Part shown: one piece after another, positions 2,130-59,313 of the stretch
Numbering within the stretch: the stretch's first letter is position 1
Layout: the number at the start of each line of letters is the position of its first letter
Assembly (NCBI GenBank): GCA_946965045.2
Contig: OX337239.1
Coordinates: 434,001-498,000, forward strand
From: Epithemia pelagica
Taxonomy: Eukaryota; Protista; Bacillariophyta
Direction: 5' to 3'
Length of the DNA stretch: 64,000 bases
The notes under the pieces: generated by a model
What the model was told of the DNA's origin: nothing
The model's input: only the letters and a program-made list of their open reading frames with translations
Database searches by the model: none
Made by a program: the position numbers and the translations under genes

Positions 2130-4987
2130 ATGATGATGAAGACTGCGGCAAGGACGATGATTGCCGTTCTCGGCACGTTGTTGTTCGCCGTCCACTCGGA
2201 GGCTTCCAAATGTGAACCCGACACGGCGTGGGCCGAAGGAATGGAACAGGTACGAAACAAACGTGGCTCTTTGTTCGTGTTGGTTTGGGAACGGCTCGTT
2301 TTTTCTCACTCTTATTTCGCGTCGTTGGTGGCAGGTGTTTCTCAATGGGGAATGGCCAACCGGTCCCATTGGATCGATTACTCAATTGATTCCTGATGCC
2401 TCTGACGCCGCCAGATCGGGCATTGACGTTGTCGACGGACAAAGTGGAGATATGGACTTTCCTCATGGAAAATTAAAGACTCTTGCGGTACGTTCCTAGA
2501 ATCAAGACTTGTAGAAGCACTGTCATTTTCTTCTCACTAGTATTGTTGTGGTTGGTCCGTGGTTCATGAATGTTTTTGATGAATAAAAAGACGGTTGGAG
2601 AATACAGCATTTGCAAGGACTCGGTGGGTGAAATGATTGTGGGTGTCCCCGATGGTTTGGGTGCCTATCTCTACGACGATGACACGGTTCGTCTCATTGT
2701 CCAGTCCGAAAGTTATGGCCCCTTGCGCTACGAATCCTACCCCTTTTATGTCAATGACGGCAAGGCCTCCTTTACCGGCAGTCATTTGCAATATGTGGAT
2801 TACGAACGCTACGATTTGGCCATGTACATGCAAGCCTCTTCGAATAATAATACGACCCGGGCCTCGAGTTTTGTCAAGGGCATGGGGGAGGTGATTCGAT
2901 ACTCGTACAATTTAAAGGGCGAACCCGTGGGTCCCCGCGTCCGGAATGGCCGTACCACGGTGGGAGCGCATTATTCCAATACCGACGTCTTGGGCAATTA
3001 CATTGTGGACCGAGCACAACCGGCCCGGGCCGATTGGTTAATGCAATCCCTCTGTTCGGCGCACATGGAAGAGAAACATCAATGGGGAGACGGAATTGGG
3101 TTGGAGGACAATGTCTACTTTACCAATGAAGAGTGGATGACCTACCAGGCCGGAACCATGAATGTGGTGGGCATTGCTCCTCATGCCATTGTACGTACCG
3201 GAATCATGGTTGTTGCTGGATCCCTCCATATGTGCCGTTGGGACCTGGTACAAACTCACACACGTTGGCTGGTTCTTGGGATTGTTTCACCATTCTCTCC
3301 TTGTTCGAAACGGATCTACGAATAGGACGTGGAGAATCATATTGACTATGCCTTGGGTGTCTTGACGCAAGGTGGTTTCGAAAAGATTGTGGAAATCAAC
3401 TCCATGCATCCAGATTATATAGTCTTGGCCATTTCGGGTAGGTCCAATGTGTACAATACCAACCCATTCTGTCATTGGGTGTCCCTCGTTTCTGACATGA
3501 TTGTCGTCGTTCTTGTTGTTGGATTGTGCAGGATACAATGGACCCTGGGGCGGAGTGGACAAGGATGGGATTGTCAACAATCGCAACATTTTGTACAGTC
3601 GCAACGATGGGGAACCCTTTGTGTGGCCCCAAGACAATCATCCAGCCCGCATTTACATTGGTCAAAAGGGCAAGAACGAACAGGGTCATTCGGCCCACGA
3701 CTTTTTGTCCCGCAATGGATTGCGCTATGGACAATTGTATGGCTTTGCCATTGACATGACCCCGCAGGGTCCCACGGGGGGTCTGTGGAGAGATCCGGCC
3801 CATCGGGTCGTCCAAAATGGATTCCGCGTGCCGGGCAAGTTTGCTCCCATTGAATGGAGATGGACCGGGCATGTCGTGTAAGTGTCTTCCGCAAGGCCAA
3901 CCTGTACACAAGGACACCTTTTGGCATGAGCCCTGTGGTTCGTGTCGAAGCCCTTTGAGCACTCCCTCTCTCACACACACACTCTCTGTATTTTTTCCGT
4001 TTGGTGTGTCTTTACAGGGACTTTGTCCACGACGGTTCGTGGGACTTTCAAGACATGCCCCTCCATGTTCCGGACGGATACCGGTTCTGGAATGGCGAAG
4101 GACCGAACCAAAAGGGATGCAAGACGGAACACTTGTCTCCCGATCCTCGACTGGGTCAATCGGCCTTTGTTCAGACCTCGACGTGTGGCTATTTTGGCCA
4201 TTACTATTTGGAATCGCTCGGCGAGGTCTTACGGTCCACCCAAGACTTTCCCTCGTCGATTGACGCCACATATTATGTGTATGAAGCCGAACGAAGCATC
4301 TTTGATCAGATTGAATTGGGCGGCAAGGGTCTCTATGCCAATGGCCAAGATGCGCGATGGAATTGCGATTCGTCCAGTTTGAACACCACGACCAACCAGT
4401 GCAGCAAGACCACCTTTGAAGACATTGATGGCTTTGAAATCATTGAAGCCCAGCATGGACAACTCTATGCCATAATTCAAGAAGACAGTGGCAACAATTT
4501 TGGCGAACGCATGTTCATTACCGGTCCACTCGAACATTTGGACGACGGCCGCGATTTGACCTATTACTTTGTGGCCTTTAGTGGTGGTCGGTTGAATTCT
4601 CGAGGAAGCGTGGGCATTCCGGCTGGTACCAACGGTCAAGCCAACTCGCATGAATTCTCCGGTGTCTTTGACTTGTCCGGTCTCTTGGCCATGGAAATGG
4701 TCGAAGTCGATCCTCACGAACTGGTCGCCCAGGGTCGACACTTGCCCCAACATCATCGTCACATTCGAGAATCACCGCACGACAGAAAGTATTATTTTGT
4801 CAACTTTTTGGTGAGTGCCGATGATACCGGTGTGGCCAAACGGGCCGCCGATCGGACCGTCGACATTAATGACAAGTCCATTGTCGTTGTCTTGCAAGCC
4901 CACAATTTGTTTGGTGGTGTCATTGCCGATTTGCAATTGGATCGCGGTGGTCAGTGGTTTCTCTACCAACCACGGCTCCGACGATAG
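2130..4987 (+). CDS. secreted atypical alkaline phosphatase (EHAP1/PhoA-aty/PhoX-like), paralogue 1; 6 exons, ~766 aa
   Basis: Exons 2130-2249, 2335-2487, 2591-3190, 3326-3437, 3532-3877, 4018-4987 join in frame across GT-AG introns; signal peptide; motifs SESYG, SLCSAH, TNEEW, FLxRNGLRYG, KxEH, EDIDG, IQEDSG, HEFSG, GGQW. Confidence 0.8.
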
Positions 4988-5411
4988 AGAAACGTTTACA
5001 AGAGTATATGCGTACATAGTGTTTGTGGACCTAACGTTATAATATATCTACCACCGCTTTCTCCTACTCCTAGTTCCTTCTCGTTTCGTCGCTCGAAAGT
5101 GATACAGTTGTTGTCGTCCTTTCAAAGAGGGATTCGACCAGAGGAAGATATCCAAGGGCAACCGTCGTCAACCACCTAGATTCTGGCCGTTTGATTACTG
5201 AGGAAAAATGTCCAACGCGTTTTGGATGGCGTCGACAGAGGCAGAGGACTGCCGTCGTCGACTGGTGGTTCGACCGACACGATCCGACAACGACACCACC
5301 ACCACCACCACCAAATTGTTTGATTGGTACGTTTTATAGTAGGTATATATATGGAGCAGCAGAGAGACAGGTGGTGGGCCTCCACCGTCAACGAGACTGT
5401 CGTGGCCAAGA

Positions 5412-6337
5412 GAGATTCGACCACGACAATCCATGTCGAAACGACCAAATGTAGGTGCACCTCCAGAATCAAGAAGTCGGTCGAAGGTCTTCATGTCCAA
5501 CTTTTGTCGGAAACCTTGAGAGAAACCCAACTGACAAGGAAAGAAGAGAGCGAGGCCAAGTATCGGATAACAGTTGCGTCAAAGCGGCCTTTCGTCGTGA
5601 AGGAGAACGTGACAGTCCACAGCTCTCGAACAACATGTTGTTAGTTGGGCTAGATCATGTGTGTCTTTGGCTGTCGTACCTCCTGACACCGGCTGTCAGC
5701 TTCGCCAATGCATCGGAACGAACGCGGTTGATTCAGAACGAACGAAATGAACGGTTGGTAACAGATGCTGTCTCGTTGTTACGGAAGATCCAACCGACAG
5801 AAACACACAAGAATGAAGCGATCTTTTGGCTGCTGTGCGTCAGAAAGATCCAATCGAATCTTTCATTGGGATGAATGAAGACATGATGTCAGACTGTCTG
5901 TTGGTGTCGCTGAATCTTTTGGATACCCCTCCAAATCTTTTTCTCTCTACTGACTGACTGTACGAGTAAGTAGGCTTCCTGATCCTGATGCTTCCGCCTT
6001 GGATTCGAGATCTTGTGTGTGTGGTCCGGGCTGCCCTCCTTCTTCGGCTGGAGCTGGAGAAGTTGGGCTCGACGCGAACAGACAATGTGAGCAACACATG
6101 CACCTTCGTTTCCCCCTTGGCACTATCTAGCACATTGTAACGTACGAACGCGTTGGTTCAAACGAATCTTCCCCAAATTTCGTCGGAAGTATGCTTTTGT
6201 CACATAAGCCCGTAAGAATAAATGAGGCTATGATCGCCTTTTTCATTCATTATCTCAGAGTGAATCTACTCTCACGAACTCCAACGTCACGGCTCGTTTG
6301 GGGGATTGTAGGCATTTCTGCGAAAGAAAAAGATTCG
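5412..6337. promoter_or_regulatory. cluster of six YGAATCTH motifs upstream of phosphatase paralogue 2
   Basis: Matches at 5412(-), 5855, 5911, 6163, 6261, 6330(-). Confidence 0.6.
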
Positions 6338-6475
6338 TTGGCTCACCCAGCAAAAGCCTTCTCCTCTCAAAATCTTTTGCTCGACGGTCGACGAGGAAGA
6401 GAGAGTCACTCTCATTTCTCATAATCTCTTTGGACTGAAGAAGAAGAAAGCAACAACAACAACAACAACAACAAG

Positions 6476-9085
6476 ATGAAGTTTGCTTCTGCCGTTGTTG
6501 CCTTTGCCACCATGAGCGTTGCCTCTGGCGCTATCTGTGAAATGGACTCCCCCATTGCCGAAGGTATGGAACAGGTAAGTGGCACCGTCACTGTGTTGGT
6601 TGTTCTCGACTCTCAAAACTCTGACACAAATCCTGTTCTCCTTACTCGTCTTGTCTGCTTTCTCTTTCTCTCAAAGGTGTTTTTCAATGGAGGATGGCCC
6701 ACAGGTCCAGTTGGATCCATCCAAGAAATCATTGCCGATGCTGCGGATGCCGAAGCCTCTGGTGCCCCGATTGTCGATGGAAAGAGTGGAAACACTGACT
6801 TTCCCCATGGTGACTTGAAAGCCCTTACCGTAAGTCAAAAGGTCTTGGGACAGGTATAAATATGTGCAAGATGATTACACAAGTACTAACCTATTCGGCA
6901 TCTATCTCTTTGTGTTAATCGACAGACTGTTGGAGAATACAGTATCTGCGAAGCGACTGCCGGAGAAATGATTGTCGGTGTCCCCGATGGTCTCGGAGCC
7001 TACCTCTACGACGACCACACAGTCCGTGTGATTGTCCAGTCCGAGAGTTATGGTCCTCTCCGTTACGAGTCCTATCCTTTCTTTGTCAACGACGGCGCCG
7101 CCTCGTTCACCGGAAGTCACGTTCAATATGTCGACTACGAACGTTACGACCTTGCCATGTTTATGGAAAACAAGGAGCCTGCCTCCAAGTTTGTCAAGGG
7201 CATGGGTGAAGCGATTGAATACTCGTACAACCTCAAGGGTGAAATGGTCGGTCCCCGTGCCCCCGAAGGCATGCCCACCACGGTCGGTGCCCATTACTCC
7301 AACACTGACGTCGCTGGTAACTACATTATCGACCGTGGTTTGCCCAACCGTGCCGATTGGCTCATGCAGTCCTTGTGTTCGGCCCATTTGGAAGAAGTTC
7401 ACCAATGGGGACCCGGTATTGGTATGGAAGACAATGTCTACTTTACCAACGAAGAATGGATGACCTACATTGAAGGCACTGTGGACCTTGTCGGTATTGC
7501 CCCCCATGCGATTGTAAGTTGTTCTGGTTCGTTGTTTGTTTGATTCGATTCGATTCAAGTTGTGGACACTCATCATTTTTGGTTTCACAGGATGTTGCCA
7601 ATCACGTCGACTATGCTTTGGGTGTGTTGACCCAAGGAGGATTCGAGAAAATTGTCGAAATCAACTCCATGCACCCCGATTATATCATCCTTGCCATTTC
7701 TGGTACGTTTCTAGAGCTGTCCATGTTGACGTTGCCTTGACAACAGTCATCTCACTTTTTGTCCTTCCACGTTTTCCTTAGGATACAACGGAGCCTTTGG
7801 CAAACTTGACGAGACAGCCATTGAAGCCAAGAGAAACGCCCTTAAAGGTGGACGTTCCAATGGTGGATCGTACGTGTGGCCGAAAAACATCCATCCGGCC
7901 CGTATCTATGTCGGAAAGAAGGGCTTCAATGAAGCGGGAGAGCCTGCCCATGACTTTTTGGCCCGCAATGGTCTTCGGTATGGTCAGCTTTATGGATTTG
8001 CCATTGACATGACAGCGACTGGTCCCACTGGAGGTCTCTGGCGTGACGAAGCCCACAAAATGGTTGGCAATGGTTTCGAAGTCCCAGGAATTTTCGCTCC
8101 CGTTAATTGGACGTGGACTGGCGAAGTTGTGGACTTTAGCGAAGATGCTTCCTGGGATTTCCAAGATACCCCTCTCAATGTCCCTGCCGGCTACGAGTTC
8201 TGGAACGCCAAGGGTAACGATGAAGGCGGATGCAAGTGCGAGCACCTTTCTCCCGACCCACGACTTGGAAAGTCTGGTTATGTCCAGAGCAGTACATGCG
8301 GATACTTTGGACATTACTACCTCAACCATATCGACCAGGTCTTGGCTGCTGTTGCTGCTGCGGGTGGCGGATTTCCAGAGTCCATTGACGCCACATACTA
8401 TGTCTATGAAGGAGAACGAAGCATCTTTGACCAAATCGACTTGGGTGGCAAGGGCCACTACAAAAATGGACAAGATGCTCGATGGAACTGTGATTCGTCC
8501 AGTTTGAACGAGACGACCAACATGTGCAGCAAGACAACCTTTGAAGACATTGATGGGTTCGAAGTTGTTGAAGGAAAGGACGGAAAGCTTTACGGAATCA
8601 TCCAAGAAGACAGTGGAAACCGTTTCGGTGACCGCATGTTCATTACCAGTCCATTGGAACATCTTGACGATGGCAACATGCTTACATACTACTTTGTTGC
8701 CTTTAGTGGTGGAAACTTGAACTCTCGTAGCGCCGTTGGTATCCCCGCAGGAACTGCTGGAGACCCAAGTGCCCACGAGTTCTCGGGAGTCTTTGACTTG
8801 TCGGGTCTTCTTGCCATGAACCGTATCGAAGTGGACCCCTCCGATATCAATGCTCACCATGGCGAAAGGAAGATTCGCGAACTCTCCGGAAAGTACTACA
8901 TGGAGGAATTCATGGTTCGTGCCGATGATACTGGAGTCGCCAAGCGTGCCGCGGATCGTTCGGTTGACATCAACGACAAGTCAATCATTATTGTTCTCCA
9001 GGCCCATGACTTGAAGGCAGGTATGATTGCTGATCTTCAGTTGGATCGTGGTGGCCAATGGTACATTTACCAACCTGACATTTAA
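6476..9085 (+). CDS. secreted atypical alkaline phosphatase (EHAP1/PhoA-aty/PhoX-like), paralogue 2; 5 exons, ~751 aa
   Basis: Exons 6476-6574, 6677-6829, 6926-7513, 7591-7702, 7782-9085 join in frame; signal peptide MKFASAVVAFATMSVASGA; same motifs as paralogue 1. Confidence 0.82.
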
Positions 9086-9848
9086 TTGATTCACCAAATC
9101 TTCTCGTCACATGCATATATTTTGTTAACCAACATGAATCGATAATCTTCCATTACATGTAGTCTCCCCTTCTCTCTATTTTGAAGCTGTTAGTCCGAAG
9201 AAAGCGTGTAAGATTGACAATCACTAGATGATGGAAAATGTGAGGGAGCGAGTCTCAGGGGTAGGGCCTAATTCTTGATCACTCTCCTACGAGGATCCTC
9301 GCAAACATCTGAATTAGCCCCTGCACTGCACTTAGAGGATGCACTCGCCATTTTTCATCCGTTGAACATGATTACTCCTATTTATCAGTTTTTACATGTC
9401 GTAGACCGTTATTTACGGTTTACTTGTTGACAGAATCATCAAGGCTAGAGGGCTAAAACCATATAGCAGCGACCCTAAGGGTCTATATTAAGGGTACAAT
9501 AACAGGTAGGCGCCAAAGCGACCCTCGGAGAAACACACTGTCTAGGTACGACAAACGACAACACAAAGTTCTTATCCATTCGATCAATGGATGGATTGAA
9601 ACACTGTTGTTAGCCGTGCAGCCATAGCGATCGACCTCGCGCTCTGTTTGAGAAGCGTCTTTCCTTTTGCGAAGCCGCCATTGCAATTGCCATACCTCTT
9701 TTGTATCGTCACATCGGGTGCTCTCTTGTTGGTGTATGCTCCACGAGAGACTAAGTGAGCGAATGTTGTTGTTCTTGTTGAGATTCGAATCCATATTCCA
9801 TATCTCTAGAACTACCCAGCACCAGCTTTTTGTCCCAAGAGGTTCCAG

Positions 9849-9998
9849 GCGCGACTGCAGTTGACATGGAGAGTTGGTGTCAATTTGTGCGTCAACGTCC
9901 AGTATTCGACATGATGACGATGATGAGACGATAGCGTTTCACCATTCGAAATCAGAGAATTGCGGCGGAGAAAAATGGCCGGGGAGCCATGGTTCTGG
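9849..9998 (+). repeat. shared upstream module, copy 1
   Basis: Blocks gcgcgactgcagttg, aacgtccag..gacatgatgac.atgatgagacga, gccatggttctg occur in the same order at 13184..13399. Confidence 0.7.
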
Positions 9999-10095
9999 TT
10001 CAGTCGGGGATTGATTCTGTCAATCTCAATGCTAGGAGTAACCACTAACCACACACCCCACTGATACTACTGGCAACAGCCGCACCACCTCCGAA

Positions 10096-11195
10096 ATGAT
10101 TCAAATGTTGACACAGCCAGATTTGTCGGCGGCGGAAGCGTCCTCTTTGCTGATGTCCAAGGCCGGAATATCCGTCGATTGGATTTTGGACGTCTTTTGT
10201 CGAATCCCCCGTTCATGGCAACGGTATCGAAGGCCGATATCCGTCGATTGGATTTTGGACGTCGCTTGTCAAATTTCGTTCATGGCAACGGTATCGAAGG
10301 CCGATTGTAATTTGTTTTTTGTGCGTGAGGTCTGTGTCATTCAACTGCTTCAAGCTCGACTGGATATATGGTCAGGCCCACTTGTGAACCATGTCGAGGT
10401 ACTTCATAAATCTTTGGATGATGCAACCAAAGCATCCTTTCGTGGTGGTGCGATCATACATGAGTTACCCACCTTGTTCTTGTCCTATACAGGTCGGTAT
10501 TCGTTCTCCCAGTTCATCCAAGTTTTAGAGAAAATCCGAGGCGAATACATATGGACTAACGTTTTTTGCGTTGATCAGTTTGCTTGGACTGGACAAAGCA
10601 AGTCCCAAGCCGTCACGCAACTCCGCAATGACTTGATCAACGGATTGCCGGAACAAATCCAGAGCATCAAGAGAATTGTCTTGGTTTTGGAAAACTGGGA
10701 TCAAGTCCGTGATACATTGAACCAAATTTGGGTGCGTTGGGAGGTATTCCATGCCGTTATAGAGTCGAGGCCAGTGCAGAACTATTGATGAGCCAAGCCG
10801 AGTTGAAGGATTTCCTGATAGCTGTTTCAGTGAGGCATGATCAAGTCCAGCAAGCCCTTGCACAAATCAAGACTACAGAAGCGAAATCAAAAGACAATGC
10901 TGCACGTGCAGAGATCTTCAAAAACAGAGGCCAAATTGCTGATGGAAACAAGTGTACGAGGATGGTCATCGGGATGACCAATGACCATCCTCATACACTT
11001 GTTTCCATGAACAATATGGCCGCATTGCCAAGTACGCGACGACGTGATGACAAAGCCTCACGGTGTCGTCGCGTACTTGATGATGGCGTTGATCTCCCGT
11101 CCAAGGGGGGCACACCGCATGCGGAAAACGGTTGGGAGCCGTGGAACGACGCCCAAAACCATGCACTGGAAGAATCTTTTGTATCTTATCATTGA
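10096..11195 (+). pseudogene. kinesin-light-chain-like TPR family gene remnant (frameshifted, truncated)
   Basis: Overlapping ORFs 10096-10788 and 10728-11195; TLFLSYTGRYS/YIWxxVFCVDQFAW N-terminal module; one HPHTLVSMNNMA TPR motif; ~70-bp internal tandem duplication at about 10161-10305. Confidence 0.7.
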
Positions 11196-11262
11196 ACGGA
11201 AAGAACATCATGTTGTTGGGTTTCGTCTTCCATTGCATAGATTTAAATGAATTACTTTGGGT

Positions 11263-12998
11263 CTAACCCTTGCGCTTAAATGTAGAGGGATACACAGCGG
11301 TAGCCATGTAGTCCGCAACATCCACCGTGTTTTGCTGCAACAAGTATGTGGTTTTGATCTGGTCCTCCCCTGCGACATTCTCCAAGAGACCTGTAAACCC
11401 AGAGACCCAGTGCCAGCTAGGATCATAGGAACCCTGCAAGCTGCGCCATGAAACAGAAAAGGAAACAGCTTGACTGGATCCAATCGGATATGGATCCGCC
11501 ACACCCATGACGGGATAAATCCCTGAAGCCCCTGTGCTGGAGGTATAGGTTCCTGTGAATGTCCCATCCGATTGGATGGGACCAATCACCAAAGTTGAAC
11601 CAAACTCGTTGATCCACGTCCCGGTAGCCCATAGAGTGCTCGTGGTGGCCGCCATTGTCTTGGTCTTGTCACTCTTGTGATGGTCACTGAGATAGATGAG
11701 TTGCTTGTCGTAGTCAAAAACACTACAAACCGTGTCCAGAAAAGTCGAACCCACCAGCAGCATTTGATCCGGCATCCCTTCGAGATAATGGACGCCCAAG
11801 ACCCACTCTTTCTTGCCATTCTCGTCAATCTCGAGAAAGTACTGTTGCGGTGTCAACCTATACGAGACTGATCCCAAGACAAGGGTAATGTCTGGGTAGT
11901 TTTCCAGATCTGAGCTGGACGTGGCAGTTGTAGGGAGCTCCCCATTGTCAGTAATTGCATTTTTAGAGTGTTGATGATGCCCTGTCCACCCTTGAACCAG
12001 GAAGACCCTGTATCAAGCACAAACTCAATGTCCTATGCCACAGTACTGTCACCGCAGATCAATTTTTGAAGATTGACAGTCCACAAGTAGTTAAAGTCCT
12101 TGTTACTTGGTACAATGAGCGGAAGAACGTTCAAGCTGCCTCGATCGAAATAGTTTCGGTTGATGCCTCCCAAGCGGCATTCCCCAAAGCCATTGACAGG
12201 GTCAGTGTAGAAAGAAGCAACGGCATACTCGATCTTGTCTTGAGCTTTTAGAACCTCCAGAAGGGAGGTAGCTTCCGTGTCAGGTTTGGAGGGAAGAGCC
12301 ATGCCTCCGTCGCAAACCAGATTCTTGAACTTGTCGCCCGTGTACTCCAATGCCAACATAATGTTAATCGGTTGGACCAGTGGAATATTCTTGGTGGTGC
12401 CATCTTCCAACTCTTCATCTAGATGAACAACATCTTTTCCATTTTTGACAGTCATATTCCCCCAAGGCCCAAAACTGACAGTGTGAACGCCGCCCGCCAA
12501 AGGTTGAAAGGTTGTAGATGCCAAAGTGTGAAACGAGTCATGGGCAAGGCATGCGTCCGTCTCACACTCGCTGGAGGTAATCCACGTGTTGAAGGTGCCG
12601 GTATCCATCATAAAGGCCAAATATTGGGGAGGCGTGCCCAATCCAATGGGAGTCACCCAAGGAGTGGCGCCATTGTCCGAGAGAGCCCCCATCAACAAGT
12701 AGAATTCAACGAATGGAATGCCTTGGTCGTCCAAGAGAGCTTCGATCCGTTCCTCTATTGTCTTAAGATCCTCCTCCTTGGACGGTAGCTCGACCGCTGG
12801 CTTGCATAATTTGCCTCCCATGTTCCATCCCCGGCAAGCACGGTGTGATGGAAGAACCACCAAACTGCTCCTGGTTGGTGTATTAGGTGGCGAATACACC
12901 ACTCCCACAACACGGCGAGCGCTCGGAATCGTAAAGGCCATGACCCCCGAGGCCATGGAGGCCCAGAGGGCGAACGACAATCCAACAACGGACTTCAT
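11263..12998 (-). pseudogene. pepsin-family (A1) aspartic protease fused to a C-terminal avidin/streptavidin-like domain; disrupted in this assembly
   Basis: First catalytic motif MMDTGT; second motif VLDTGSS in frame just after TAG (12033-12035); 1-bp deletion in the T5 run at 11960-11964; then LVGSTFL pepsin end and GTWINEFGS..GTFTGTY..SFSVSW..FTG..KTTYLL avidin pattern. Confidence 0.85.
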
Positions 12999-13183
12999 GG
13001 TCAGTGCCGATCTTCGATACTTTGAATAAAATGAGAAGATCCTCGTCCATTGGCATCAAAAAAAGATCGCGAAAGTAGGATGGCCCTGCCCCCAGATTTA
13101 TACTCAACGCACTCCTACTACAGAATAAAGAGTAGTATATGCGCGCCCGTCAGAAGAGGTAATGCTATAGCCCCCCATTCCAA

Positions 13184-13399
13184 GCGCGACTGCAGTTGCA
13201 TTTTTTGCTTCCGCAAGCACAATCTTTTTTTCCTCAACAAAAACAGAAGACAGGTCGCATAATCCGCAATCATGATCAACATACTCTCTTTCTTCCCAAG
13301 AACGTCCAGCATCTGACATGATGACAATGATGAGACGAACGATAGCGTTTCGCCATTACAGATCCGACGGAGAAACGTGGGGGAACGCCATGGTTCTGT
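13184..13399 (+). repeat. shared upstream module, copy 2
   Basis: Same ordered blocks as 9849..9998. Confidence 0.7.
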
Positions 13400-13674
13400 G
13401 GTTGTCCGAGTCGAGGCCAAGATTCTGTCTGTCTGACGCACGTGTCTCATTTTTCTGGAAGATTCTCAAGATCCAACGGCTGATGGGAGTTGTTGAGGGA
13501 AAGATCGTGGGCAATGTTGAATGGCCGCATCGAACATCCAAACGATCCAGTGAAAATTGACCAGTCGGCTTTTGCAGGTTCGAGTTGGAAGATTCGGCAA
13601 GACGTTGATCCAGTGTTTCCTTTCACAATTGATCTCTCTTTGATCTCTTTTGTCCTAGGAGGATCTTACGAAGC

Positions 13675-15411
13675 ATGACCACTGCCACAACCTCCGGTCC
13701 AACCGGCAGTGTCCCACAAGGACAACAGTCGTCCTCCTCTCTCCATCATTTTCCCTCCATGGCTAACGAGTCGACGACAGCCACTGGTCGTCGTTTGTTT
13801 GGACAGGTACTGTTGCTACAAGATTGGGGAGAAGAGGCAGCCGATAGTACTCCGCGCTATTGGGAGTTGTTTACCGATTTGCTCCTCGTAGCAGCAGCAT
13901 CGTCCATGGCCGATGGATTCCAATCGCAACAAAACTGGTTTGGCTTGTTGGAATTTGTCCTTTTGTACTCGGCCATGGTCCATGGTTGGTTGTTGTACAC
14001 ACATCATTACACCAGCCGCTTTATCGAATCTTCCTTGTTCCATTCCGCCATCCTATTTCTTTATCTACTGGGCATGGCGGCCACGATCGTGAATGCCTCG
14101 TTGGAGACATCCAAGGCCTTCTCGGTGGGTATCCTGATGCAACGAGGAGCCTTTCTCGTCATGCTGGTTCAAATCATTGTCGGCCTACCACGAGCGCAAT
14201 GGTTTGCCTCCCTTTTGGCGACCATTGTAGTAGTCTCCATGTTGTTGTTCCTTGTTACAGCGTTGTATGGGCCTCCAAACGAAGAACACGAAGAACAGGA
14301 GGAGACGCTGTTCTCCGATACCGAGGGAACCGCAGAGACGGACGAAGACGACACAGAAGAGTTGCCGTGGTTCACCATTGTCTGTTGGTGTGCCGCCATG
14401 CTCGTTGACTTTTCGACTGAATTCTGTATGATGGTTTTCTTGACCCGAGAGCGATTGGTACCCGTCAACATTGATCATTCCAAGGACCGGATTGGAGTAC
14501 TGGTACGTCTGGCCTTATGTGTCGTGAATTCGAGGGAAGCGACTCCACTGTGTAGGCACGACTCGAAAACGTGCACTTACTTACGAGTCTTTTCTTTTGC
14601 ACTTGTCTGGTGTTTTATCGATCCCTTGTTGCAGGTGCTAGTAATGATGGGTGAAACGGTCATTAGTGCCACCATTTCCTATCGCGCTCATGTGGAACGC
14701 GGCATTGACCATGAAACCAATCAAAAACTGTACGAGGTGCTCGTCTTTTCGTTTTTGCTAGTGTTCATGTTTACGCTCCTGTACTTTCACGTACAACCGC
14801 ATCCGGAAGACCATGCCTTTCGACGATCCCGAGTTACGGGATGGCTGTGTTTGCTCTTGAGCAAATTGCTCGGCATGGCCCTGTTGATGGTGGGCGTCTG
14901 TATCAAAGTGGCCGTCCAGACCGTCGCGGTCGGTACCACGACGACCGTCTTTGATCAGTGGCTCTTGACCGGGGCCGTCGGTGGGAGTCTCATTCTCTTG
15001 TTGGGCTTGCGGTGCTGTCACTACCTGGGCCGTATGCCTCGTCCGTCCCATCCTCCTCATGTCAAGATTTTATTGTGGGTCTGGTGGGCATTCATGGCCG
15101 TGGCCTGTTTGGTTCCATTCTTTTTTGGTCGCTTATTTCCACAGTATTACAACAATCATCACCCCCGAAGCCCTCTTCCTCCATTGGCCATTTCGTCCTT
15201 TTGGCTCTTGTTTGTCTGTGTTGCGGATTCCTGTTTTACCCATGTGTTGGAGGCCAAACACTTACTAGTCACACCCGAAGAAGACCGTGAATGCGAACCG
15301 TCTTCCGAACAAACGGCATTGCTTTCGCAGGATCCAAATGCGTTGACCACACCCCATAATAATACCCATATGGGTCAGTCATCGTTTTACATGGGATCGC
15401 AGCGAAGCTAA
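13675..15411 (+). CDS. low-temperature-requirement protein A (LtrA)-family multi-pass membrane protein; probable in-frame intron 14503-14634
   Basis: YWELFTDLLLV and HSKDRIGVL|VLVMMGE match LtrA consensus (WxELFxDLxFV; ERxGLxxIIxLGE); many TM helices; gtacgt...ttgcag intron of 132 nt. Confidence 0.75.
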   Translation: MTTATTSGPTGSVPQGQQSSSSLHHFPSMANESTTATGRRLFGQVLLLQDWGEEAADSTPRYWELFTDLLLVAAASSMADGFQSQQNWFGLLEFVLLYSAMVHGWLLYTHHYTSRFIESSLFHSAILFLYLLGMAATIVNASLETSKAFSVGILMQRGAFLVMLVQIIVGLPRAQWFASLLATIVVVSMLLFLVTALYGPPNEEHEEQEETLFSDTEGTAETDEDDTEELPWFTIVCWCAAMLVDFSTEFCMMVFLTRERLVPVNIDHSKDRIGVLVRLALCVVNSREATPLCRHDSKTCTYLRVFSFALVWCFIDPLLQVLVMMGETVISATISYRAHVERGIDHETNQKLYEVLVFSFLLVFMFTLLYFHVQPHPEDHAFRRSRVTGWLCLLLSKLLGMALLMVGVCIKVAVQTVAVGTTTTVFDQWLLTGAVGGSLILLLGLRCCHYLGRMPRPSHPPHVKILLWVWWAFMAVACLVPFFFGRLFPQYYNNHHPRSPLPPLAISSFWLLFVCVADSCFTHVLEAKHLLVTPEEDRECEPSSEQTALLSQDPNALTTPHNNTHMGQSSFYMGSQRS

Positions 15412-15690
15412 GGATGCCATTCTTGACTCTGACTTTTGTGTGTGTGTGTAGACCAGAGAATCCTGGCATCAATGGCGCGTCCAAAACAAGAGGATCCTAC
15501 AGAAACAAGAGCCAAAAACTATTGCATGGTGGAGCAGCATGTGTATTGTATTTCTATTTCTATGATTCTATTCAAGAGCACGGCACAGTCATAACGAGGA
15601 CCTGAACCAGCGTCTTGTTGGAGTCTATAGCGATGCAAAAAGTGTTTTTGGAGGACCACTCGATGAGTTCTTGAGCTATTCTCATGAACA

Positions 15691-17322
15691 TCATGTTGGA
15701 CTCGAAGAAACATTTCTTGGTACCACTTCACGCTCGACGGTACCATTGGCGGAGCGATTTGGTACTTGCCACACCTGGATCTCTTGGGGAGGAGGCGCAC
15801 TCGTCAGCACGATACAACAACCGTTGTTGCACAGAGCTAAATGACTTTGTTCGGGAGAGAGCCACTGTCGACTTGGTGGTGTGGTGGTTTCATGGGTAGT
15901 CGCGAATGGCTCGTCGTCGTTGGCATGGACCAGGTCCACTACCAGAAACCATTGCTTGTGGATAAATTTTTGCAGAGACCGCACCAGCTCCTCGACGAGG
16001 CATTGTTGGCACAAATCGCCAATATATGTCTGGAGTTTTTCCTGGGACCACTGCGTCACGTGCTGAATGGCGTCGTGGAGTGCTTGTCGGTTGTTCTCCT
16101 CGTTGCGTCCAAGTTGGACGAACACGGCAAACCGGTGATGAAAATCTTGCATGACCCAAGCACGGCCATTTTGAATCACAGAATCCACCGAATATTCTTG
16201 AGTATGGACCACCAACAGTTGATAGTTTCGAAATGTCGCTTCCATATTCAGTGTTGGAGCTTGAAAAGGACCACCAGGAGACATGATTCGGGGAAGGTTA
16301 CTTCCCGGATTTTGAAGCCAAAATGGGGTCGACTCGGCGGATGGATCTGGGAACAGGAGGAGAGGACCATTCGGCGAACCTTGGGGAGCGAGGACGGACT
16401 CAATCTGCAGGACAAAGACTTGAGAAGGACGGACCGACACTCCAAACACCGTTTCATCATCTGCCGGAGGACGGTCGTACGCATGGTGTGTGGCGACTAC
16501 AATCCCATCCATGAGGGGTCGGAACGGTTCCAAAAACTCGGGCAATGCCAACGAGGGAAGCAGCAACGGATGCGGTGCATGGTACAGAACGAGCAAAAAC
16601 CGAATGGTACAAATCACTGCAAGAGGACGGTGGTGGTGGATCTTGCGTCGCTTGGCTGGACGGTCGACCTCGGTGCCTTGCTGCTGCTGCTGCAAGCGTT
16701 TCAATTGCCGCACCATTGCTTGGTAACTGGCATGCCAATTTTGCCAGTCCATCACGAGAACGTGACAATGACAAGTTGGGTCTTGTCGGTGCTGTTGTTG
16801 CCACTGTAGGCTCGTTGGTTGAACCACAGTATTCAACAAGGATGAAATCATGGGAATGTTCTGGTCTTGTGGTGCTACAGTAACAACAGAGAGCGTCGGA
16901 CCATTGTTGGCATGACGGCCTTGTTCCATACCATGACAAATATCATTCATGATTTGTAAACGATTGGAAACGTAGTAGGACCTTTTCATTGTCATAGGGA
17001 TGGTACGATTCATGGGGGGCGGACCCTGGATCACTGGCTCTTCTTGTTCTTCACTGGAGGACGATGTTGTAGGAGGATCCAAGGAAGGAATGCGGTCGTC
17101 ATCGTCATTGTCGTCATCTTGTGGAGCAACGGGTCGGCTGCGGTCCGTTCCCGGAGTGACCATTGTTGTGGGTTCCATCCTGTCCGATTCGCCGCCGGTG
17201 CGGATGGGAATGGTGCTCGTGCTGGTGGTTCGACCTGCAGAGGGTGATGCATAATTGGTGGTGAGACTATTATTATTACTATTCATCTTGATCCTTGATT
17301 TCGAATGTTTTTCTTTCACCAA
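15691..17322 (-). CDS. hypothetical protein (~530-543 aa)
   Basis: Long uninterrupted ORF with diatom-like low-complexity N-terminus; no family recognised. Confidence 0.55.
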   Translation of the reverse strand: MVKEKHSKSRIKMNSNNNSLTTNYASPSAGRTTSTSTIPIRTGGESDRMEPTTMVTPGTDRSRPVAPQDDDNDDDDRIPSLDPPTTSSSSEEQEEPVIQGPPPMNRTIPMTMKRSYYVSNRLQIMNDICHGMEQGRHANNGPTLSVVTVAPQDQNIPMISSLLNTVVQPTSLQWQQQHRQDPTCHCHVLVMDWQNWHASYQAMVRQLKRLQQQQQGTEVDRPAKRRKIHHHRPLAVICTIRFLLVLYHAPHPLLLPSLALPEFLEPFRPLMDGIVVATHHAYDRPPADDETVFGVSVRPSQVFVLQIESVLAPQGSPNGPLLLFPDPSAESTPFWLQNPGSNLPRIMSPGGPFQAPTLNMEATFRNYQLLVVHTQEYSVDSVIQNGRAWVMQDFHHRFAVFVQLGRNEENNRQALHDAIQHVTQWSQEKLQTYIGDLCQQCLVEELVRSLQKFIHKQWFLVVDLVHANDDEPFATTHETTTPPSRQWLSPEQSHLALCNNGCCIVLTSAPPPQEIQVWQVPNRSANGTVEREVVPRNVSSSPT

Positions 17323-17541
17323 AAAGAACAGAAAACAACCAGATCACAAAAGGGGTGTCTCTCGTTCGACACAATTGTGAGCGAGTGTGATGGTCGGTGA
17401 TGGCACGAGGGTGAGTGATGAAAACAAAAAGAATCGAATCCGATCAGATCCCCATCCAACCCGCACGCGCACGTTTGTTGTTTGTTGTGCTCATCGAGCC
17501 TATTGGTCCGTTGAAAAGATTCGTCGGTCGGAAAGGATGAC

Positions 17542-18930
17542 GTGACATCCGCTAAATTCTTTGATCTTCTTTTAAAGGCAATGGTTTCCCACTGTCTTAC
17601 CAGTGTCGTACGGTATTCAAAAGATCCACGCATGGGGGACCCAGAGCAATGGTGCCATCATGGCGGAAAACGACAATGGCAATGTAGAACGGTATATTGC
17701 AAAGAAGTCATGCTTCAGAACCTTCCCATGGCGCAAACGTTTGATGTGTACTCTGCCTGGATGGATAGCATGGCACAACGGGGGAATTTGCAGGATGCCA
17801 TTTTGTCATTGCTTGAAGTTTTGGGAAACTGTGATGGTCGACATTCTTCAAATCAAGGCGACCATGAAAAAAACGAAATACCGCCCAGTTGGAGTTCATG
17901 ACGGATCGAACCAGAATTGAGTTGATGAGACTCTTCTTGGACAAATAATTAGCCGCCTGTTGCTACCGACTGCCCGATGAACGCTTTGCCGTGGTGGTAT
18001 TCAAGGCCGTGAATTGGACCCTAAAATATGGATTTTGTGGGTTTTCTTCTCCCGCCGTTGCGAGTACGGCTGTGGTATTGGGGGACACTTTGAAGCAGGC
18101 TTTTTGCATGGCCAACATGCATTGCGGCTCATGGAAAGTCTCCACGGCAGGAAACAGCGGCACGAACCATGTTTATCCTGTATGGCTACTTGTACCCTTG
18201 AGAGACCAGCCAAGGACGTCCTGAAACCCTTGTTACGGGCGTACGATATTGCCGTAAAGACCGGGTTAACACGCAATGGTTGTATCGTTCCGATTCGCCG
18301 TCCACCCCATTGGTTGCCCTTGTCTAATCCTCTGCTGGAACTGGATGCTTTTGCGAATCATCATGGAGGGGACGCCCTTGGCGGGTTTCCGAAATTCTAC
18401 CAAACAATTGTGTGACTTGAGAGGCGATCACGCCTTTTACATGGTATTTACCTCCCATTCCATGCGACATGTCTTTGGCAATCTCATGGGTTTGGACAAT
18501 CGAGAAGATTCCACCAACATGGTGGGCGAAATCAGCAGTGTGGAACGTCACGAGTTTTGTCCCCCAAAATTTCGCCTTTCAGAGCATGGTGTGGACCTAC
18601 TTTTGGCGATCATGTCCCACACGCCGATTTGGTCCTGCGCAAGTTGGTCACGATTTTTTGCAAAAAAGCTCTATTGTCCACTTTCAAACTCGTGTGGGAT
18701 ACATTTCACAAGGGTGTATCGTGTTAGGCCGCCGCCCGCGAGACGGGTCGCAAAAAGTACTTGAAACTGGGGCACATCTTTCGGGCCAAGGTCAAGAAAT
18801 GGTTGAATATGGGCAATTCCAATGTCAAGCCCAGTGGTTGGCCTGGTTAGATGCCGAAGCCATGGCCTTGAAGAAACGGGGACGAACCGAGTTTGCCTTC
18901 ATTAAGGAGTATGAAGTGACCATTTGGTAG
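17542..18930 (+). pseudogene. degraded C-terminal part of a diatom AAA/TPR (cyclase-associated-like) family gene
   Basis: Fragments in several frames (YCKEVMLQ..DVYSAWMDS, FKAVNWTLKYG, AYDIAVKTGL, WLDAEAMALKKRG..EYEV) with multiple stops and frameshifts. Confidence 0.55.
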
Positions 18931-19472
18931 GCCGAACCGGGTGGCTACCAACATGACGCAGCGTTGGCAAGTGAACGGCACGGGGAATATCAATTAACAG
19001 TCATGAAAGATTCCGAGTAAGCGCTTATCGATTCGAAGAGACCAAGAGGTATTGGAGAAGCTGGGGCGCTCTGGCCAAGGTGGATCGAACATATGCCTCA
19101 CTCAAGCCCACACCCACACGTGAAATCTATGCACTCAAATCCAGTTCCCGACACCCGAGTGCGTTCAGAACAAAGTGAGAATATTAGAGCAACAAAGCGT
19201 TTCCGAAAGAGGATGAACAATCATCACTGCTACCGAGGAATCTCTGCAGTTCCTACGACGTATCCTCATCAACCTAACATGGTGAACCGATGCAGTCTAG
19301 GACATGAGACTAGTGTGAATGAATGCAACTTTATCTTTTATTCCGGCTAATTCTATTGTAGCACAAAGGTTGTATAAAACGCACCACTGTACCAGGTTGC
19401 TGTTTAAACCAATTTCTATATTGGATATTTGTGCGAGAAAAACATGACATGCCGGTACAGATGGAACCCCCT

Positions 19473-19880
19473 TCACCATCTCTCGTCATGTTGTGAAAAC
19501 AGACAATCTAGTTGTCTCCGCCGGCTTCTACGGGACCACACTGGTGGTGGTCGTAGCTCCAGCGGCGGAGGGTGAAGCTTCGATATTGCGCATTTCCTCC
19601 AGCTGGAATTGGTAAAACAAAAAAGGCGTGAGAACAAGGCCCGCAACGCGTGGTTTGTGGATTCGGCACTTACAACCTCCTCCCAGGAGCGATCCCCAAA
19701 TTCCACAAAGGTGATGCGGAGGCCCATGAGGTCGATCAAGGGACGAATGACCATGATATGGCCCACCTCCAAGAGTCCAAAGGCCATTTCGAGATCGTCA
19801 ACACCCTCATTCACAAAATTGCGATACCACTCTTGGGTCATACACTGCAGCAAACACACCAGGGTGAGAACATGGTTCAC
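19473..19880 (-). other. short ORF or gene fragment, weakly SAM-like (WYRNFVNEGVDDLE)
   Basis: ORF track plus weak motif resemblance only. Confidence 0.25.
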
Positions 19881-20049
19881 TTCAAAACCCCATCCAACAA
19901 CGTCCGTCGCTTCCTGTGACCAACCGCCACGGCAACTTCAACACCCATTTCCAATACGTACCTGATCAAAGCTGTTCCCAGGCAAGGGAAGCGGTATGGA
20001 TTTGAAAGGTTCCTGTTCCAAATGGTTCAGAAACTCCATTTGGAACAGG

Positions 20050-20430
20050 AACCTTTCAAATCCATACCGCTACCATCGCGAAAACGCCGTGAAGGAGACT
20101 TGCGTGTCGTATCCGCTCGAGAATCTTGAAACGGTATACGTGTGTAATGGAGCTGTTGAGCAGCATGTTTTGGGTTGGTAGATGGTCTGTTTCAACTGTT
20201 CCGTCCGTTCGATCAATGATAGCTCCGCAGAATGACACGTGCTCTTTTGAGGTAGCTTGCGATTGATGTTCAACTCCTTTGTCTGAAGGGTTTCAAGGCT
20301 TGTGTTCCAAGTGCCCCTTCCACTGACGGTGCTGCATGTGGTCTTTTGGACCTTTACATGCCTTTGGGTGATTGCTTTTCGTCTTGTGACTGCTGTTGCT
20401 GCAATCGCAACTCTTGTTCTTGATGCATCC
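20050..20430. repeat. degenerate dispersed duplicate, copy 1
   Basis: Aligns with about 24900..25260 (e.g. cgagaatcttgaaa.ggtatacgtgtgtaatggagctgttgagcag). Confidence 0.8.
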
Positions 20431-20740
20431 TGACCAATTATGAAAAGGGGAAGGGTTATAGGGATAAGCCCGACCACTCGACCAATGGCCTCCCCTTGTC
20501 ATGTACGCTCGAACAATGAAGTGATTGGGCTGGTACTCGGCCGCATTCCGACCATGCAGCTGGCAGCGATTGACTGTGAGGAATAATGAACGTTATCGCG
20601 AGAAATTAAAACCACGGTGAAAATTGGCTTTGGACTGATAAGCTTGTCTGTCTGGGATAGTATCATAGTCGTCTTGTCCACCGTAGTGATCACGGTAGTA
20701 ATCACCACCCGCGTACCCAAGGTCATCATAGTAGTATAAT

Positions 20741-21135
20741 TAGGAGTACTTCCCGGTGTCGAGTCCTTTCAAGGAGGGACCGCCCGGCGCGAAGGGTAGA
20801 ATGACGAGGAGGGCAATGGTCGAGGAGGGCGCATGCCCGACAAGACAATTGCCCGTCAAGTCATTCTCCCGACAAGCCGGGCGCGCCCGACGCGGGAGGA
20901 CGGCCAGACACAGGGAAGTAGTTTGCTTACTCCCTATCAAGCTGTGTAGGTATTGTAGTGAGAACTTCCTCGAAGACGTGTCACACAGTTGTCACACATG
21001 TGTCACACAAATGTCACACACCAGGTAGGAAACCGCGCGGCCCGCACGAAAACCCTGAACACTACTTCCCGGTCGTACAATAAATTCCTACTGTAGTAGA
21101 AAAATGTGAGACGAACTACCTACACAGTCTGGTAT
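20741..21135. repeat. GC-rich non-coding element with tacttcccggt direct repeats and 4x gtcacaca
   Basis: tacttcccggt near 20747 and 21063; inverted gggaagta near 20913; gtcacaca x4 at about 20980-21020. Confidence 0.45.
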
Positions 21136-21278
21136 GGAGTTAGTATGGATCATCATTGTGCGACGATATGGCAATGAGTTTTCGTGAAAACGTGAAGAAG
21201 ACAAATCCGCCGGGATATTCAATGGCTACTATCGTCACTGTGCCAAACCATGCTACATTTTCGGCATGGCAGCAACCT

Positions 21279-58732: not shown

Positions 58733-58768
58733 TCCTGGTAGTCCTGACAATACCGCTCTGTGAGGGAG

Positions 58769-59224
58769 TGTTCAAATACTGTACGCAAGGGCATAACTAC
58801 ACGTGGGGGACAATGGGGGACAGAGACAGAATTCCCATGACACAACACGCCCAACGCATCATTGAACCGCCGCCTCTCACAAATCACCAATCAACAAAGA
58901 CGAACGACGCATCTCAACATGGGATTTGGACGACGGCTATGTAACACTCATGCCGCTCTAAACAACGACTCCCATGGCCAGAGCAATAACGGTACTGGCT
59001 CCTAAGTAAGCAGACGCCACTTAGGGAGCCACGAATCTCAGAAGAGGCAGCAAGGTCGTCCATAAACAATTGGGACCGCCAATTTGGTCGATCAACGCAC
59101 CAATCTACGAGTCAACGCTCAACGCATGAGCAGGAGCGATTCATAGCTTGCACACGATAATCTAGAAACACACAATTTTGCAAAAGAGCTCTTTTTCGTT
59201 ACTCGACAGTAGTGAAAAACAACA
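58769..59224 (+). repeat. 3' LTR
   Basis: See 5' LTR. Confidence 0.97.
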
Positions 59225-59313
59225 ATGAAAGCTTGTCGGAAACGCAGCGTTTGACAAAGAAAATCAGAACAAGCAACCAGGGAACGAAAGTGGTCGACAG
59301 GGAAAACAATGAC

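What the first reader, a model, noticed from the sequence alone, without database searches (positions are those of the whole stretch)
11263..12998. Pepsin-type aspartic protease fused to an avidin-like domain
A complete bilobal A1 protease (DTGT and DTGS) continues through a short linker (KSDKTKTMAATT) into a ~125-aa domain that aligns by eye with avidin along its whole length. Biotin-site residues equivalent to N12, S16, Y33, W70 and F79 are kept, while W97, W110 and N118 appear replaced by Y, Y and S, so ligand specificity may differ. I know of no characterised protease-avidin fusion, nor of avidins described from diatoms. Possible roles (inference): targeting biotinylated proteins for proteolysis, biotin scavenging or sequestration against bacteria, or avidin-driven oligomerisation. 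The protease lacks an obvious long propeptide, and its GALSDNGATPW start recalls bacterial pepsin homologues (shewasin-like), which raises the possibility of horizontal transfer.
Basis: partly seen in the sequence, partly recalled or inferred. Interest (0 to 1): 0.85.

Follow-up and report, generated by a model that had tools for sequence, protein, structure and literature searches.

The report
Bacterial pepsin-avidin fusion gene in diatom
A diatom carries a gene, taken from marine bacteria, that joins a pepsin-like protein-cutting enzyme to a biotin-binding (avidin) barrel; bacteria were already known to have this fusion, it had not been reported from algae, and every copy assembled here is broken.

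Summary
On the minus strand, 12998..11263, Pfam finds a full A1 aspartic protease (DTGT, DTGS) joined in frame to an Avidin domain (E 1.8e-15). The domain folds as a streptavidin-type barrel (pLDDT 90, TM 0.8).

It is not a new architecture. Protease-avidin fusions were described in silico in bacteria in 2021 (PMC8033661) but never tested.

The host is new. The window is diatom DNA (Copia element; sacsin-like gene with diatom best hits). In trees of both domains, the gene and one intact metagenomic ortholog (P0168) nest inside marine gammaproteobacterial fusions. This indicates transfer of the whole fusion from bacteria.

Only the two diatom-type proteins carry an N-terminal signal peptide followed by Ala|Phe and an acid-free, basic stretch. 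That is the diatom plastid-import pattern.

The window copy is broken by a TAG (12035-12033) and a 1-nt deletion (about 11962). The other haplotype contigs carry a different 1-nt deletion in the linker. dN/dS of 0.34 points to recent decay.

The ureido-binding residues are invariant, so the likely function is biotin-directed proteolysis. This is inferred, not shown.

Side result: many bacterial relatives sit directly behind a PAS-GGDEF cyclase gene.

The scan's earlier notes held nothing on avidin.

The parts
11263..12998 (-). Whole pepsin-avidin gene: single exon, interrupted by one stop codon and one frameshift
   Evidence: aligns without intron-like gaps to bacterial fusions and to P0168
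12936..12998 (-). Signal-peptide-like N-terminus MKSVVGLSFALWASMASGVMA, followed by Phe at +1
   Evidence: Hydrophobic core, Kyte-Doolittle 12-residue mean 1.78. Absent from all bacterial homologs. Cleavage site is inferred, not predicted by a dedicated program.
12819..12935 (-). Transit-peptide-like stretch (FTIPSARRVVGVVYSPPNTPTRSS...): 5 K/R, no D/E, rich in Ser, Thr and Pro
   Evidence: P0168 has the same type of presequence, ending AGTQA|FAPAF.
12039..12656 (-). A1 protease N-lobe and start of the C-lobe
   Evidence: Pfam Asp, E 2.3e-19, profile positions 3-193 of 315
12594..12605 (-). First catalytic motif, DTGT
12033..12035 (-). Premature in-frame TAG; the other haplotype contigs have CAG (Gln)
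12003..12014 (-). Second catalytic motif, DTGS
11962..11963 (-). Site of a 1-nt deletion (frameshift) relative to L005/L006; not in a homopolymer run of the intact allele
11689..11961 (-). Remainder of the protease C-lobe
   Evidence: Pfam Asp, E 2.3e-5, profile positions 238-312
11629..11685 (-). Linker DHHKSDKTKTMAATTSTLW. The other haplotype contigs lack one base at the position matching 11669, which puts their avidin domain out of frame.
11266..11640 (-). Avidin/streptavidin-type eight-stranded beta-barrel (125 aa)
   Evidence: Pfam Avidin. AlphaFold2 pLDDT 90.1 with eight strands. Foldseek to streptavidin: TM 0.79-0.81, probability 1.00.
11263..11265 (-). Stop codon (TAG)

Best explanation
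This is a diatom nuclear copy of the bacterial 'A1 aspartic peptidase-avidin' fusion (the beta6-type avidins of Laitinen et al. 2021). It was acquired as a whole from a marine gammaproteobacterium and then adapted to its eukaryotic host: its base composition matches the host, and it has gained an N-terminal signal peptide plus an Ala|Phe transit-peptide-like presequence, the pattern diatoms use for plastid import. When intact, as in the ortholog P0168, the protein would have a catalytically competent pepsin-fold protease tethered by a short linker to a streptavidin-fold barrel. The barrel keeps the ureido-binding triad (N, S, Y), S45, W79 and W92. It has altered the residues and loop that clamp the free carboxylate of biotin. 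The inferred mechanism is that the barrel docks on biotin, most plausibly protein-bound biotinyl-lysine, and so brings the protease to biotinylated proteins or makes it respond to biotin. In a plastid the obvious target would be acetyl-CoA carboxylase. In this genome the fused product is no longer encoded. The window allele has a nonsense codon and a 1-nt deletion around the second active-site motif. The other haplotype contigs have a 1-nt deletion in the linker, which leaves a protease without avidin. The gene is therefore a recently decaying, polymorphic pseudogene. Shown: domain identity, the fusion, bacterial ancestry, the lesions and past purifying selection. Inferred: plastid targeting, biotin binding and biotin-directed proteolysis. 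The confidence given is for the whole statement: identity, origin and gene decay are near certain, and the biotin-directed mechanism alone is about 0.35-0.4.
For: Domains and fold. Same architecture in bacteria, in both domain orders and also as adjacent separate genes. Published description. Eukaryotic (diatom) host: Copia and sacsin genes; best named hits are Seminavis, Mayamaea, Nitzschia and other diatoms; the same locus is present on a 2.07-Mb contig. Phylogeny: in the protease tree the window and P0168 form a clade (97/87*), sister to a Paraglaciecola fusion (98/91*), inside the bacterial clade and 100/100 apart from animal pepsins. The avidin tree places them inside the Asp-Avidin bacterial clade (100/99*). 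Gene GC is 50.4% against 49.8% for the window. The presequence occurs only in the two diatom-type proteins. Catalytic motifs are intact in nearly all family members. Streptavidin's biotin-contact positions are among the invariant columns of the family. Lesions. The indels are not homopolymer-type. dN/dS is 0.34, with fewer non-synonymous changes than neutrality predicts (binomial P = 6e-4).
Against: No binding or proteolysis data exist for any member of the family. W108 and W120 are Tyr, D128 is Ser and the L3,4 loop is one residue shorter, so affinity or specificity may differ from classical avidins. Bacterial members lack signal peptides, and a cytoplasmic high-affinity avidin would be expected to be harmful. 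Many bacterial members are in an operon with a PAS-GGDEF cyclase, which points to signalling rather than biotin biology. Plastid targeting rests on a motif read by eye; no SignalP or ASAFind run was possible. P0168 is called diatom-type only from its presequence and its non-bacterial flanks; its organism is unknown. The inter-domain geometry of the model is uncertain (pTM 0.66).
Confidence: 0.6

Rival explanations
1. The avidin-like barrel is a ligand sensor for something other than biotin, for example a nucleotide second messenger made by the neighbouring GGDEF cyclase. On this reading it switches the protease on or off, in a cyclase-plus-effector layout.
For: A PAS-PAS-GGDEF gene lies directly upstream on the same strand in 10 bacterial loci from four families. 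Other members sit next to sigma-54 activators or a STAND ATPase. The carboxylate-binding part of the pocket differs from streptavidin.
Against: The ureido-binding triad and S45, which are specific for biotin's ring, are invariant. No GGDEF gene is in the diatom window. No PADLOC defence model matches. To my knowledge, no avidin-fold protein is known to bind cyclic dinucleotides.
Confidence: 0.15
2. The avidin domain acts independently of the protease's substrate choice. It could sequester biotin as a defence after secretion, or it could simply dimerise or tetramerise the protease.
For: Classical avidins are secreted, oligomeric biotin scavengers. The diatom proteins have a signal peptide. The 2021 survey proposes a defence role.
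Against: The bacterial fusions have no signal peptide. The link between the two domains is kept in three arrangements: both fusion orders and adjacent genes. That argues for joint action on one target. The Phe at +1 and the acid-free basic stretch point to plastid import rather than secretion.
Confidence: 0.12
3. The gene is intact in the living cell, and the stop and frameshifts are sequencing or assembly errors.
For: dN/dS of 0.34 shows constraint until recently. Each allele carries different lesions.
Against: One lesion is a base substitution (C to T), not an indel. The two 1-nt indels are outside homopolymers, and indels across 15 kb of the haplotype alignment are not homopolymer-type. L005 and L006 are independent contigs and agree exactly across the gene. 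No plausible intron can remove the stop.
Confidence: 0.08
4. The gene belongs to a contaminating bacterium, or the contig is chimeric.
For: The closest intact relatives are all bacterial.
Against: The gene is embedded in eukaryotic DNA on three contigs, one of them 2.07 Mb. Its GC matches the host. It has a eukaryote-type presequence absent from bacteria. It is only 55-58% identical to the nearest bacterial proteins.
Confidence: 0.02

Closest known systems
Bacterial aspartic peptidase A1-avidin fusions (beta6 / 'Extended' avidin clades; e.g. Oleiagrimonas soli WP_043104392, Nitrincola, Ca. Thiodiazotropha); Laitinen et al. 2021, BMC Ecol Evol 21:53
   Same: Same domain order and same propeptide-less pepsin domain with DTGT and DTGS. 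Same avidin subtype (WxNEFGS, GTYxSxTGA, SWHWVSGF, YLLQQN, PSTF). Identity is 55-58% over the C-terminal 232 aa.
   Different: The host is eukaryotic. An N-terminal signal peptide plus transit-peptide-like extension has been added. The W120-equivalent is Tyr. There is no GGDEF partner gene. The copy here is broken.
Avidin-Asp fusions in the reverse order (Hugenholtzia/Flexibacter roseola, Enterovibrio calviensis) and split Asp + avidin gene pairs (L008, L039)
   Same: The same two domain families are held together.
   Different: The domain order is reversed or the two genes are separate. Their avidin domains form a separate clade (100/99*).
Streptavidin / chicken avidin
   Same: Eight-stranded barrel, TM about 0.8, about 31% identity. 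N23, S27, Y43, S45, W79 and W92 equivalents are kept.
   Different: W108 is Y, W120 is Y and D128 is S. N49 and S88 are not conserved and the L3,4 loop is shorter. The barrel is fused to an enzyme, and it is not known whether it binds biotin.
Shewasin A-type bacterial pepsin homologs
   Same: A1 fold without a propeptide, of bacterial origin.
   Different: Shewasin A is a stand-alone protease. I made no direct comparison with its sequence here.

Membership tests
Peptidase family A1 (pepsin-like) | Bilobal pepsin fold covering both lobes | tested here: met
   Pfam Asp on both pieces. PDB phmmer matches across 320 residues to cathepsin D and pepsin. The model of ortholog P0168 gives TMt 0.80-0.85 to chymosin, pepsin and renin.
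Peptidase family A1 (pepsin-like) | Two catalytic Asp residues in D-T/S-G motifs | tested here: met
   MMDTGT and LDTGSS are present. In the window allele a stop codon separates them.
Peptidase family A1 (pepsin-like) | Pepstatin-sensitive endopeptidase activity | not testable with these tools
   Needs a biochemical assay.
Avidin/streptavidin family (PF01382) | Profile match above the curated threshold | tested here: met
   57.8 bits against a cut-off of 24.
Avidin/streptavidin family (PF01382) | Eight-stranded antiparallel beta-barrel | tested here: met
   AlphaFold2 pLDDT 90.1 with eight strands. Foldseek probability 1.00 to streptavidin.
Avidin/streptavidin family (PF01382) | Full set of biotin-contact residues | tested here: inconclusive
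   N23, S27, Y43, S45, W79 and W92 are kept. W108 and W120 are Tyr, D128 is Ser, and N49 and S88 are not kept.
Avidin/streptavidin family (PF01382) | High-affinity biotin binding | not testable with these tools
   No member of this clade has been assayed.
Bacterial protease-avidin fusion clade (Laitinen 2021) | A1 peptidase and avidin in one polypeptide, grouping with these fusions in trees of both domains | tested here: met
   The C-lobe, linker and avidin lie in one continuous frame.
Diatom plastid-targeted pre-proteins (ASAFAP-type bipartite presequence) | Signal peptide, aromatic residue at +1 of the cleavage site, and a basic, acid-free, hydroxyl-rich transit peptide | tested here: inconclusive
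   The pattern is present by inspection and composition in the window protein and in P0168. No SignalP, ASAFind or localisation test was possible.
Functional gene (versus pseudogene) | Uninterrupted reading frame | tested here: not met
   TAG at 12035-12033 and a 1-nt deletion at about 11962 in the window. A 1-nt deletion in the linker in L005 and L006.

The most novel reading that the evidence does not exclude
The intact diatom protein, as in P0168, is imported into the plastid. There its avidin barrel docks on the biotinyl-lysine of acetyl-CoA carboxylase so that the attached pepsin-like protease can destroy it. That would be a horizontally acquired, biotin-addressed switch for fatty-acid synthesis. 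The bacterial originals would be signal-controlled (GGDEF or sigma-54) biotin-directed proteases acting on the biotin carboxyl carrier protein.
Probability: 0.12. Interest if true: 0.8.

Novelty: new member of a known kind. Interest (0 to 1): 0.5.

Why it matters
Avidins are heavily used as laboratory tools, yet their natural roles are poorly understood. The protease-avidin fusions noted in bacteria in 2021 have no known function.

Three results here bear on that. First, the fusion is kept together in three gene arrangements. Second, it crossed into diatoms as a unit. Third, it acquired a plastid-type address there. Together they argue that the two domains act jointly, and they give a concrete hypothesis to test: proteolysis directed at biotinylated proteins.

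The finding also adds the first avidin-family gene I could find reported for a diatom. The different lesions on different haplotypes are consistent with a transferred gene now being lost. The conserved GGDEF partner gene in bacteria is a new lead for working out what the family does.

Tried and rejected
- **Intron rescue of the stop.** The only GT..AG candidates around the TAG are 9-20 nt long. The other allele reads straight through with Gln, in register with its homologs. Rejected.
- **Homopolymer sequencing error.** Indels across the 15-kb haplotype alignment are almost all outside homopolymers. Rejected as the main explanation.
- **Synteny between the window and the P0168 contig (L007).** None was found beyond the gene itself.
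- **Search of bacterial genomes with a 16-sequence avidin alignment.** It was too diverse for the pattern search. It worked with 5 sequences.
- **JGI metagenome scan for more diatom-type copies.** It returned only bacterial-type relatives at 46-48% identity and one degenerate fragment, L035.
- **PADLOC defence models.** No match.
- **Rfam on the window.** Nothing found.
- **Literature.** No paper links avidin with diatoms. The diatom HGT survey mentions neither avidin nor aspartic proteases. No study characterising the fusion has appeared since 2021.
It reports an 'intronless prokaryote-type aspartic protease' elsewhere in this genome. I could not retrieve it, so whether an intact paralog exists is untested.

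Full report
**What is in the sequence.**
The feature is a single-exon gene on the minus strand from 12998 to 11263. It reads in three in-frame pieces.

- Piece A (12998-12036, 321 aa) matches Pfam Asp over profile positions 3-193 (E 2.3e-19). It contains MMDTGT.
- Piece B (12032-11964) contains LDTGSS.
- Piece C (11961-11266, 232 aa) matches the end of Pfam Asp (E 2.3e-5) and Pfam Avidin (E 1.8e-15, 57.8 bits, cut-off 24). NCBIfam's streptavidin model also matches.

The C-lobe, the linker DHHKSDKTKTMAATTSTLW and the avidin domain lie in one open frame (12012-11266), so the two domains are truly fused. The pieces are separated by an in-frame TAG (12035-12033) and by a 1-nt deletion at about 11962-11963.

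**Fold.**
The 125-aa C-terminal domain was predicted with a 16-sequence alignment. It folds with pLDDT 90.1 into eight strands. It superposes on streptavidin with TM 0.79-0.81, about 31% identity and probability 1.00.

A model of the intact ortholog P0168 (pLDDT 81) has a disordered N-terminal 42 residues, a well-folded protease, a low-confidence linker and the barrel. Its protease part matches chymosin, pepsin, renin and plasmepsin X with TMt 0.80-0.85. By sequence, the protease aligns over about 320 residues to cathepsin D and pepsin.

**Pocket residues.**
I used the HMMER alignment to streptavidin. N23, S27 and Y43 (the ureido-oxygen triad), S45, W79 and W92 are conserved. W108 is Tyr, W120 is Tyr and D128 is Ser. 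N49 and S88, which hold biotin's carboxylate, are not conserved, and the L3,4 loop is one residue shorter.

Across 16 family members the invariant or near-invariant columns include N11, S15, Y32, S34, W65, Y99 and L101. These are the streptavidin contact positions, so the pocket is the conserved part of the domain. Most bacterial members keep Trp at the W120 position. The two diatom-type proteins, Paraglaciecola and P0004 have Tyr there.

**The architecture is already known in bacteria.**
Word-indexed and exhaustive HMMER searches found full-length fusions of 485-503 aa in both orders.

- Asp-Avidin: P0011, P0012, P0014, P0169, P0170.
- Avidin-Asp: P0013, P0015-P0018, P0173-P0175.

Named members are Oleiagrimonas citrea and O. 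soli, Candidatus Thiodiazotropha, Enterovibrio calviensis and Hugenholtzia roseola. Databases annotate them 'avidin/streptavidin family protein'.

A scan of one genome per prokaryotic species gave 19 loci. Most are marine Gammaproteobacteria: Sedimenticolaceae, Chromatiales, Marichromatium, Nitrincola, Paraglaciecola and Thiomicrorhabdus. Most of these encode Asp-Avidin proteins of about 495-515 aa without signal peptides.

In two other bacteria the protease and the avidin are adjacent separate genes (L008; L039/L040, overlapping by 4 nt).

Laitinen et al. [quoted passage not shown] They called it novel and did not test it. I found no later characterisation.

**The host is a diatom.**
The window carries a Copia-type retroelement (gag-pre-integrase, RVT_2) and a 2309-aa sacsin/DUF3684 gene. 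The best named relatives of that gene are Seminavis robusta, Mayamaea pseudoterrestris, Nitzschia spp., Pseudo-nitzschia, Fistulifera, Thalassiosira and Cyclotella. This agrees with earlier notes of this scan.

The same locus is present on two further contigs of the same ENA assembly, one of them 2.07 Mb. The gene's GC (50.4%) equals the window's (49.8%). Contamination is therefore excluded.

**Origin.**
In a maximum-likelihood tree of the protease domain (38 rows), the window protein and P0168 form a clade (97/87*). P0168 is a 536-aa intact ORF on a JGI metagenome contig with non-bacterial flanks.

That clade is sister to the Paraglaciecola arctica fusion (98/91*). It lies within the bacterial radiation and is separated from animal pepsins by a 100/100 branch. 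The avidin-domain tree puts the same pair (91/81) inside the Asp-Avidin bacterial clade (100/99*), apart from the Avidin-Asp clade.

The two domains tell the same story, so the fusion entered the diatom lineage as a unit from a bacterium. No named diatom protein appeared among the hits, so the gene is rare in diatoms.

**Eukaryotic additions.**
Only the two diatom-type proteins have N-terminal extensions.

- Window: MKSVVGLSFALWASMASGVMA|FTIPSARRVVGVVYSPPNTPTRSS...
- P0168: MVFTLTANMMQFIFAGTLLAGTQA|FAPAFIAKTTRSPLTK...

Each has a hydrophobic core, Ala at -1 and Phe at +1. This is followed by a stretch with 3-5 basic residues, no acidic residues and 21-25% Ser/Thr.

This is the bipartite ER-signal plus 'ASAFAP' pattern that established work on diatom plastid import defines (Kilian and Kroth 2005; Gruber et al. 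2007, 2015; cited from my own knowledge). I could not run a predictor, so plastid targeting is an inference.

**State of the gene here.**
I aligned the three contigs. The window has T where the others have C at 12035, giving TAG instead of CAG. It also lacks one base at about 11962: the others read INTLTNAITDNG.

The other two contigs are identical to each other in the gene. They lack one base at the position matching 11669 in the linker, so their reading frame ends 27 codons later and omits the avidin domain (P0006, P0007). No assembled haplotype therefore encodes the intact fusion. One still encodes a complete protease.

The indels are not homopolymer-type, here or in the flanking 15 kb, and one lesion is a substitution. 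Assembly error is therefore unlikely.

The two alleles differ by 20 synonymous and 23 non-synonymous changes (dS 0.052, dN/dS 0.34). That is fewer non-synonymous changes than neutrality predicts (binomial P = 6e-4). The gene was under constraint until recently.

**How it most likely works.**
Shown: a competent-looking pepsin active site, conserved in nearly all family members, is tethered to a streptavidin-fold barrel whose most conserved residues are the biotin ring-binding ones.

Inferred: the barrel binds biotin. Retention of the ring-binding residues, together with loss of the carboxylate-binding residues and the shorter lid loop, would suit amide-linked biotin on proteins. The persistence of the pairing in three arrangements (two fusion orders and adjacent genes) suggests that the protease acts on, or is controlled through, what the barrel binds.

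I rate the identity, origin and pseudogene statements as near certain. I put the biotin-directed-proteolysis mechanism at roughly 0.35-0.4.

The main rival comes from bacterial gene context. In 10 loci from Rhodanobacteraceae, Sedimenticolaceae, Chromatiaceae and Oceanospirillaceae, a PAS-PAS-GGDEF diguanylate cyclase gene lies immediately upstream on the same strand. In others there is a sigma-54 activator or a STAND ATPase. The 2021 paper does not mention this. It suggests signal-controlled deployment, or possibly that the barrel senses a different ligand.

**Verdict.**
The feature is a new, eukaryotic member of a known but functionally uncharacterised bacterial family, it was acquired horizontally, and it is now decaying in this genome. 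Interest is moderate.

Noticed in passing
L013-L018, L020-L022, L024 (about positions 250-1890 in each locus): In 10 bacterial loci a PAS-PAS-GGDEF diguanylate cyclase gene of about 520 aa lies directly upstream of the pepsin-avidin fusion on the same strand, from a 4-nt overlap to a gap of about 50 nt. The cyclase orthologs are 46-63% identical. The 2021 avidin survey does not mention this.
   Followed up: partly
L026:2318-4963; L037:1696-3975; L039:6535-8763; L036:1620-3980: Other family members have different close neighbours. Paraglaciecola has an AAA_16/NACHT-like STAND ATPase overlapping the fusion by 4 nt. Enterovibrio and L039 have sigma-54 activators. Hugenholtzia has a TonB-dependent receptor 20 nt upstream and a pyruvate carboxylase (a biotin enzyme) about 3 kb away.
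   Followed up: partly
L008:6696-8390; L039:5001-6514: Two bacteria carry the protease and the avidin as separate adjacent genes (4-nt overlap in L039). This is a split version of the fusion.
   Followed up: partly
L001:1603-1605 (also L002:2589, L003:538, L004:1596): A bacterial relative, identical in four independent assemblies, has TGA where its kin have the Cys of LDCDGG. A small GC-rich hairpin starts 6 nt downstream. This could be a nonsense mutation or a selenocysteine codon.
   Followed up: partly
L024 / P0011 (Ca. Thiodiazotropha): The first catalytic Asp is replaced by Asn (MLNTGT) in one Thiodiazotropha fusion. Close relatives keep Asp.
   Followed up: no
window 13675-15411 (+): The divergently oriented neighbour is an intact 578-aa LtrA-like membrane protein (a Pfam family named for bacteria). 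On the other haplotype contig (L005) it is split into 254-, 312- and 54-aa ORFs, with a cluster of small deletions matching window 14554-14624.
   Followed up: partly
window 54782-60948 (+): Copia-type retrotransposon: gag-pre-integrase, SH3-like and RVT_2 domains in consecutive ORFs.
   Followed up: no
window 3802-21199 versus L005 and L006: The haplotype contigs are mosaics. L005 is 99.9% identical to the window over 3802-6214 but 97.8% over 6008-15412. L006 is 93.8% identical over 3922-6227. This indicates at least three haplotypes or recombinant alleles in the assembly.
   Followed up: partly
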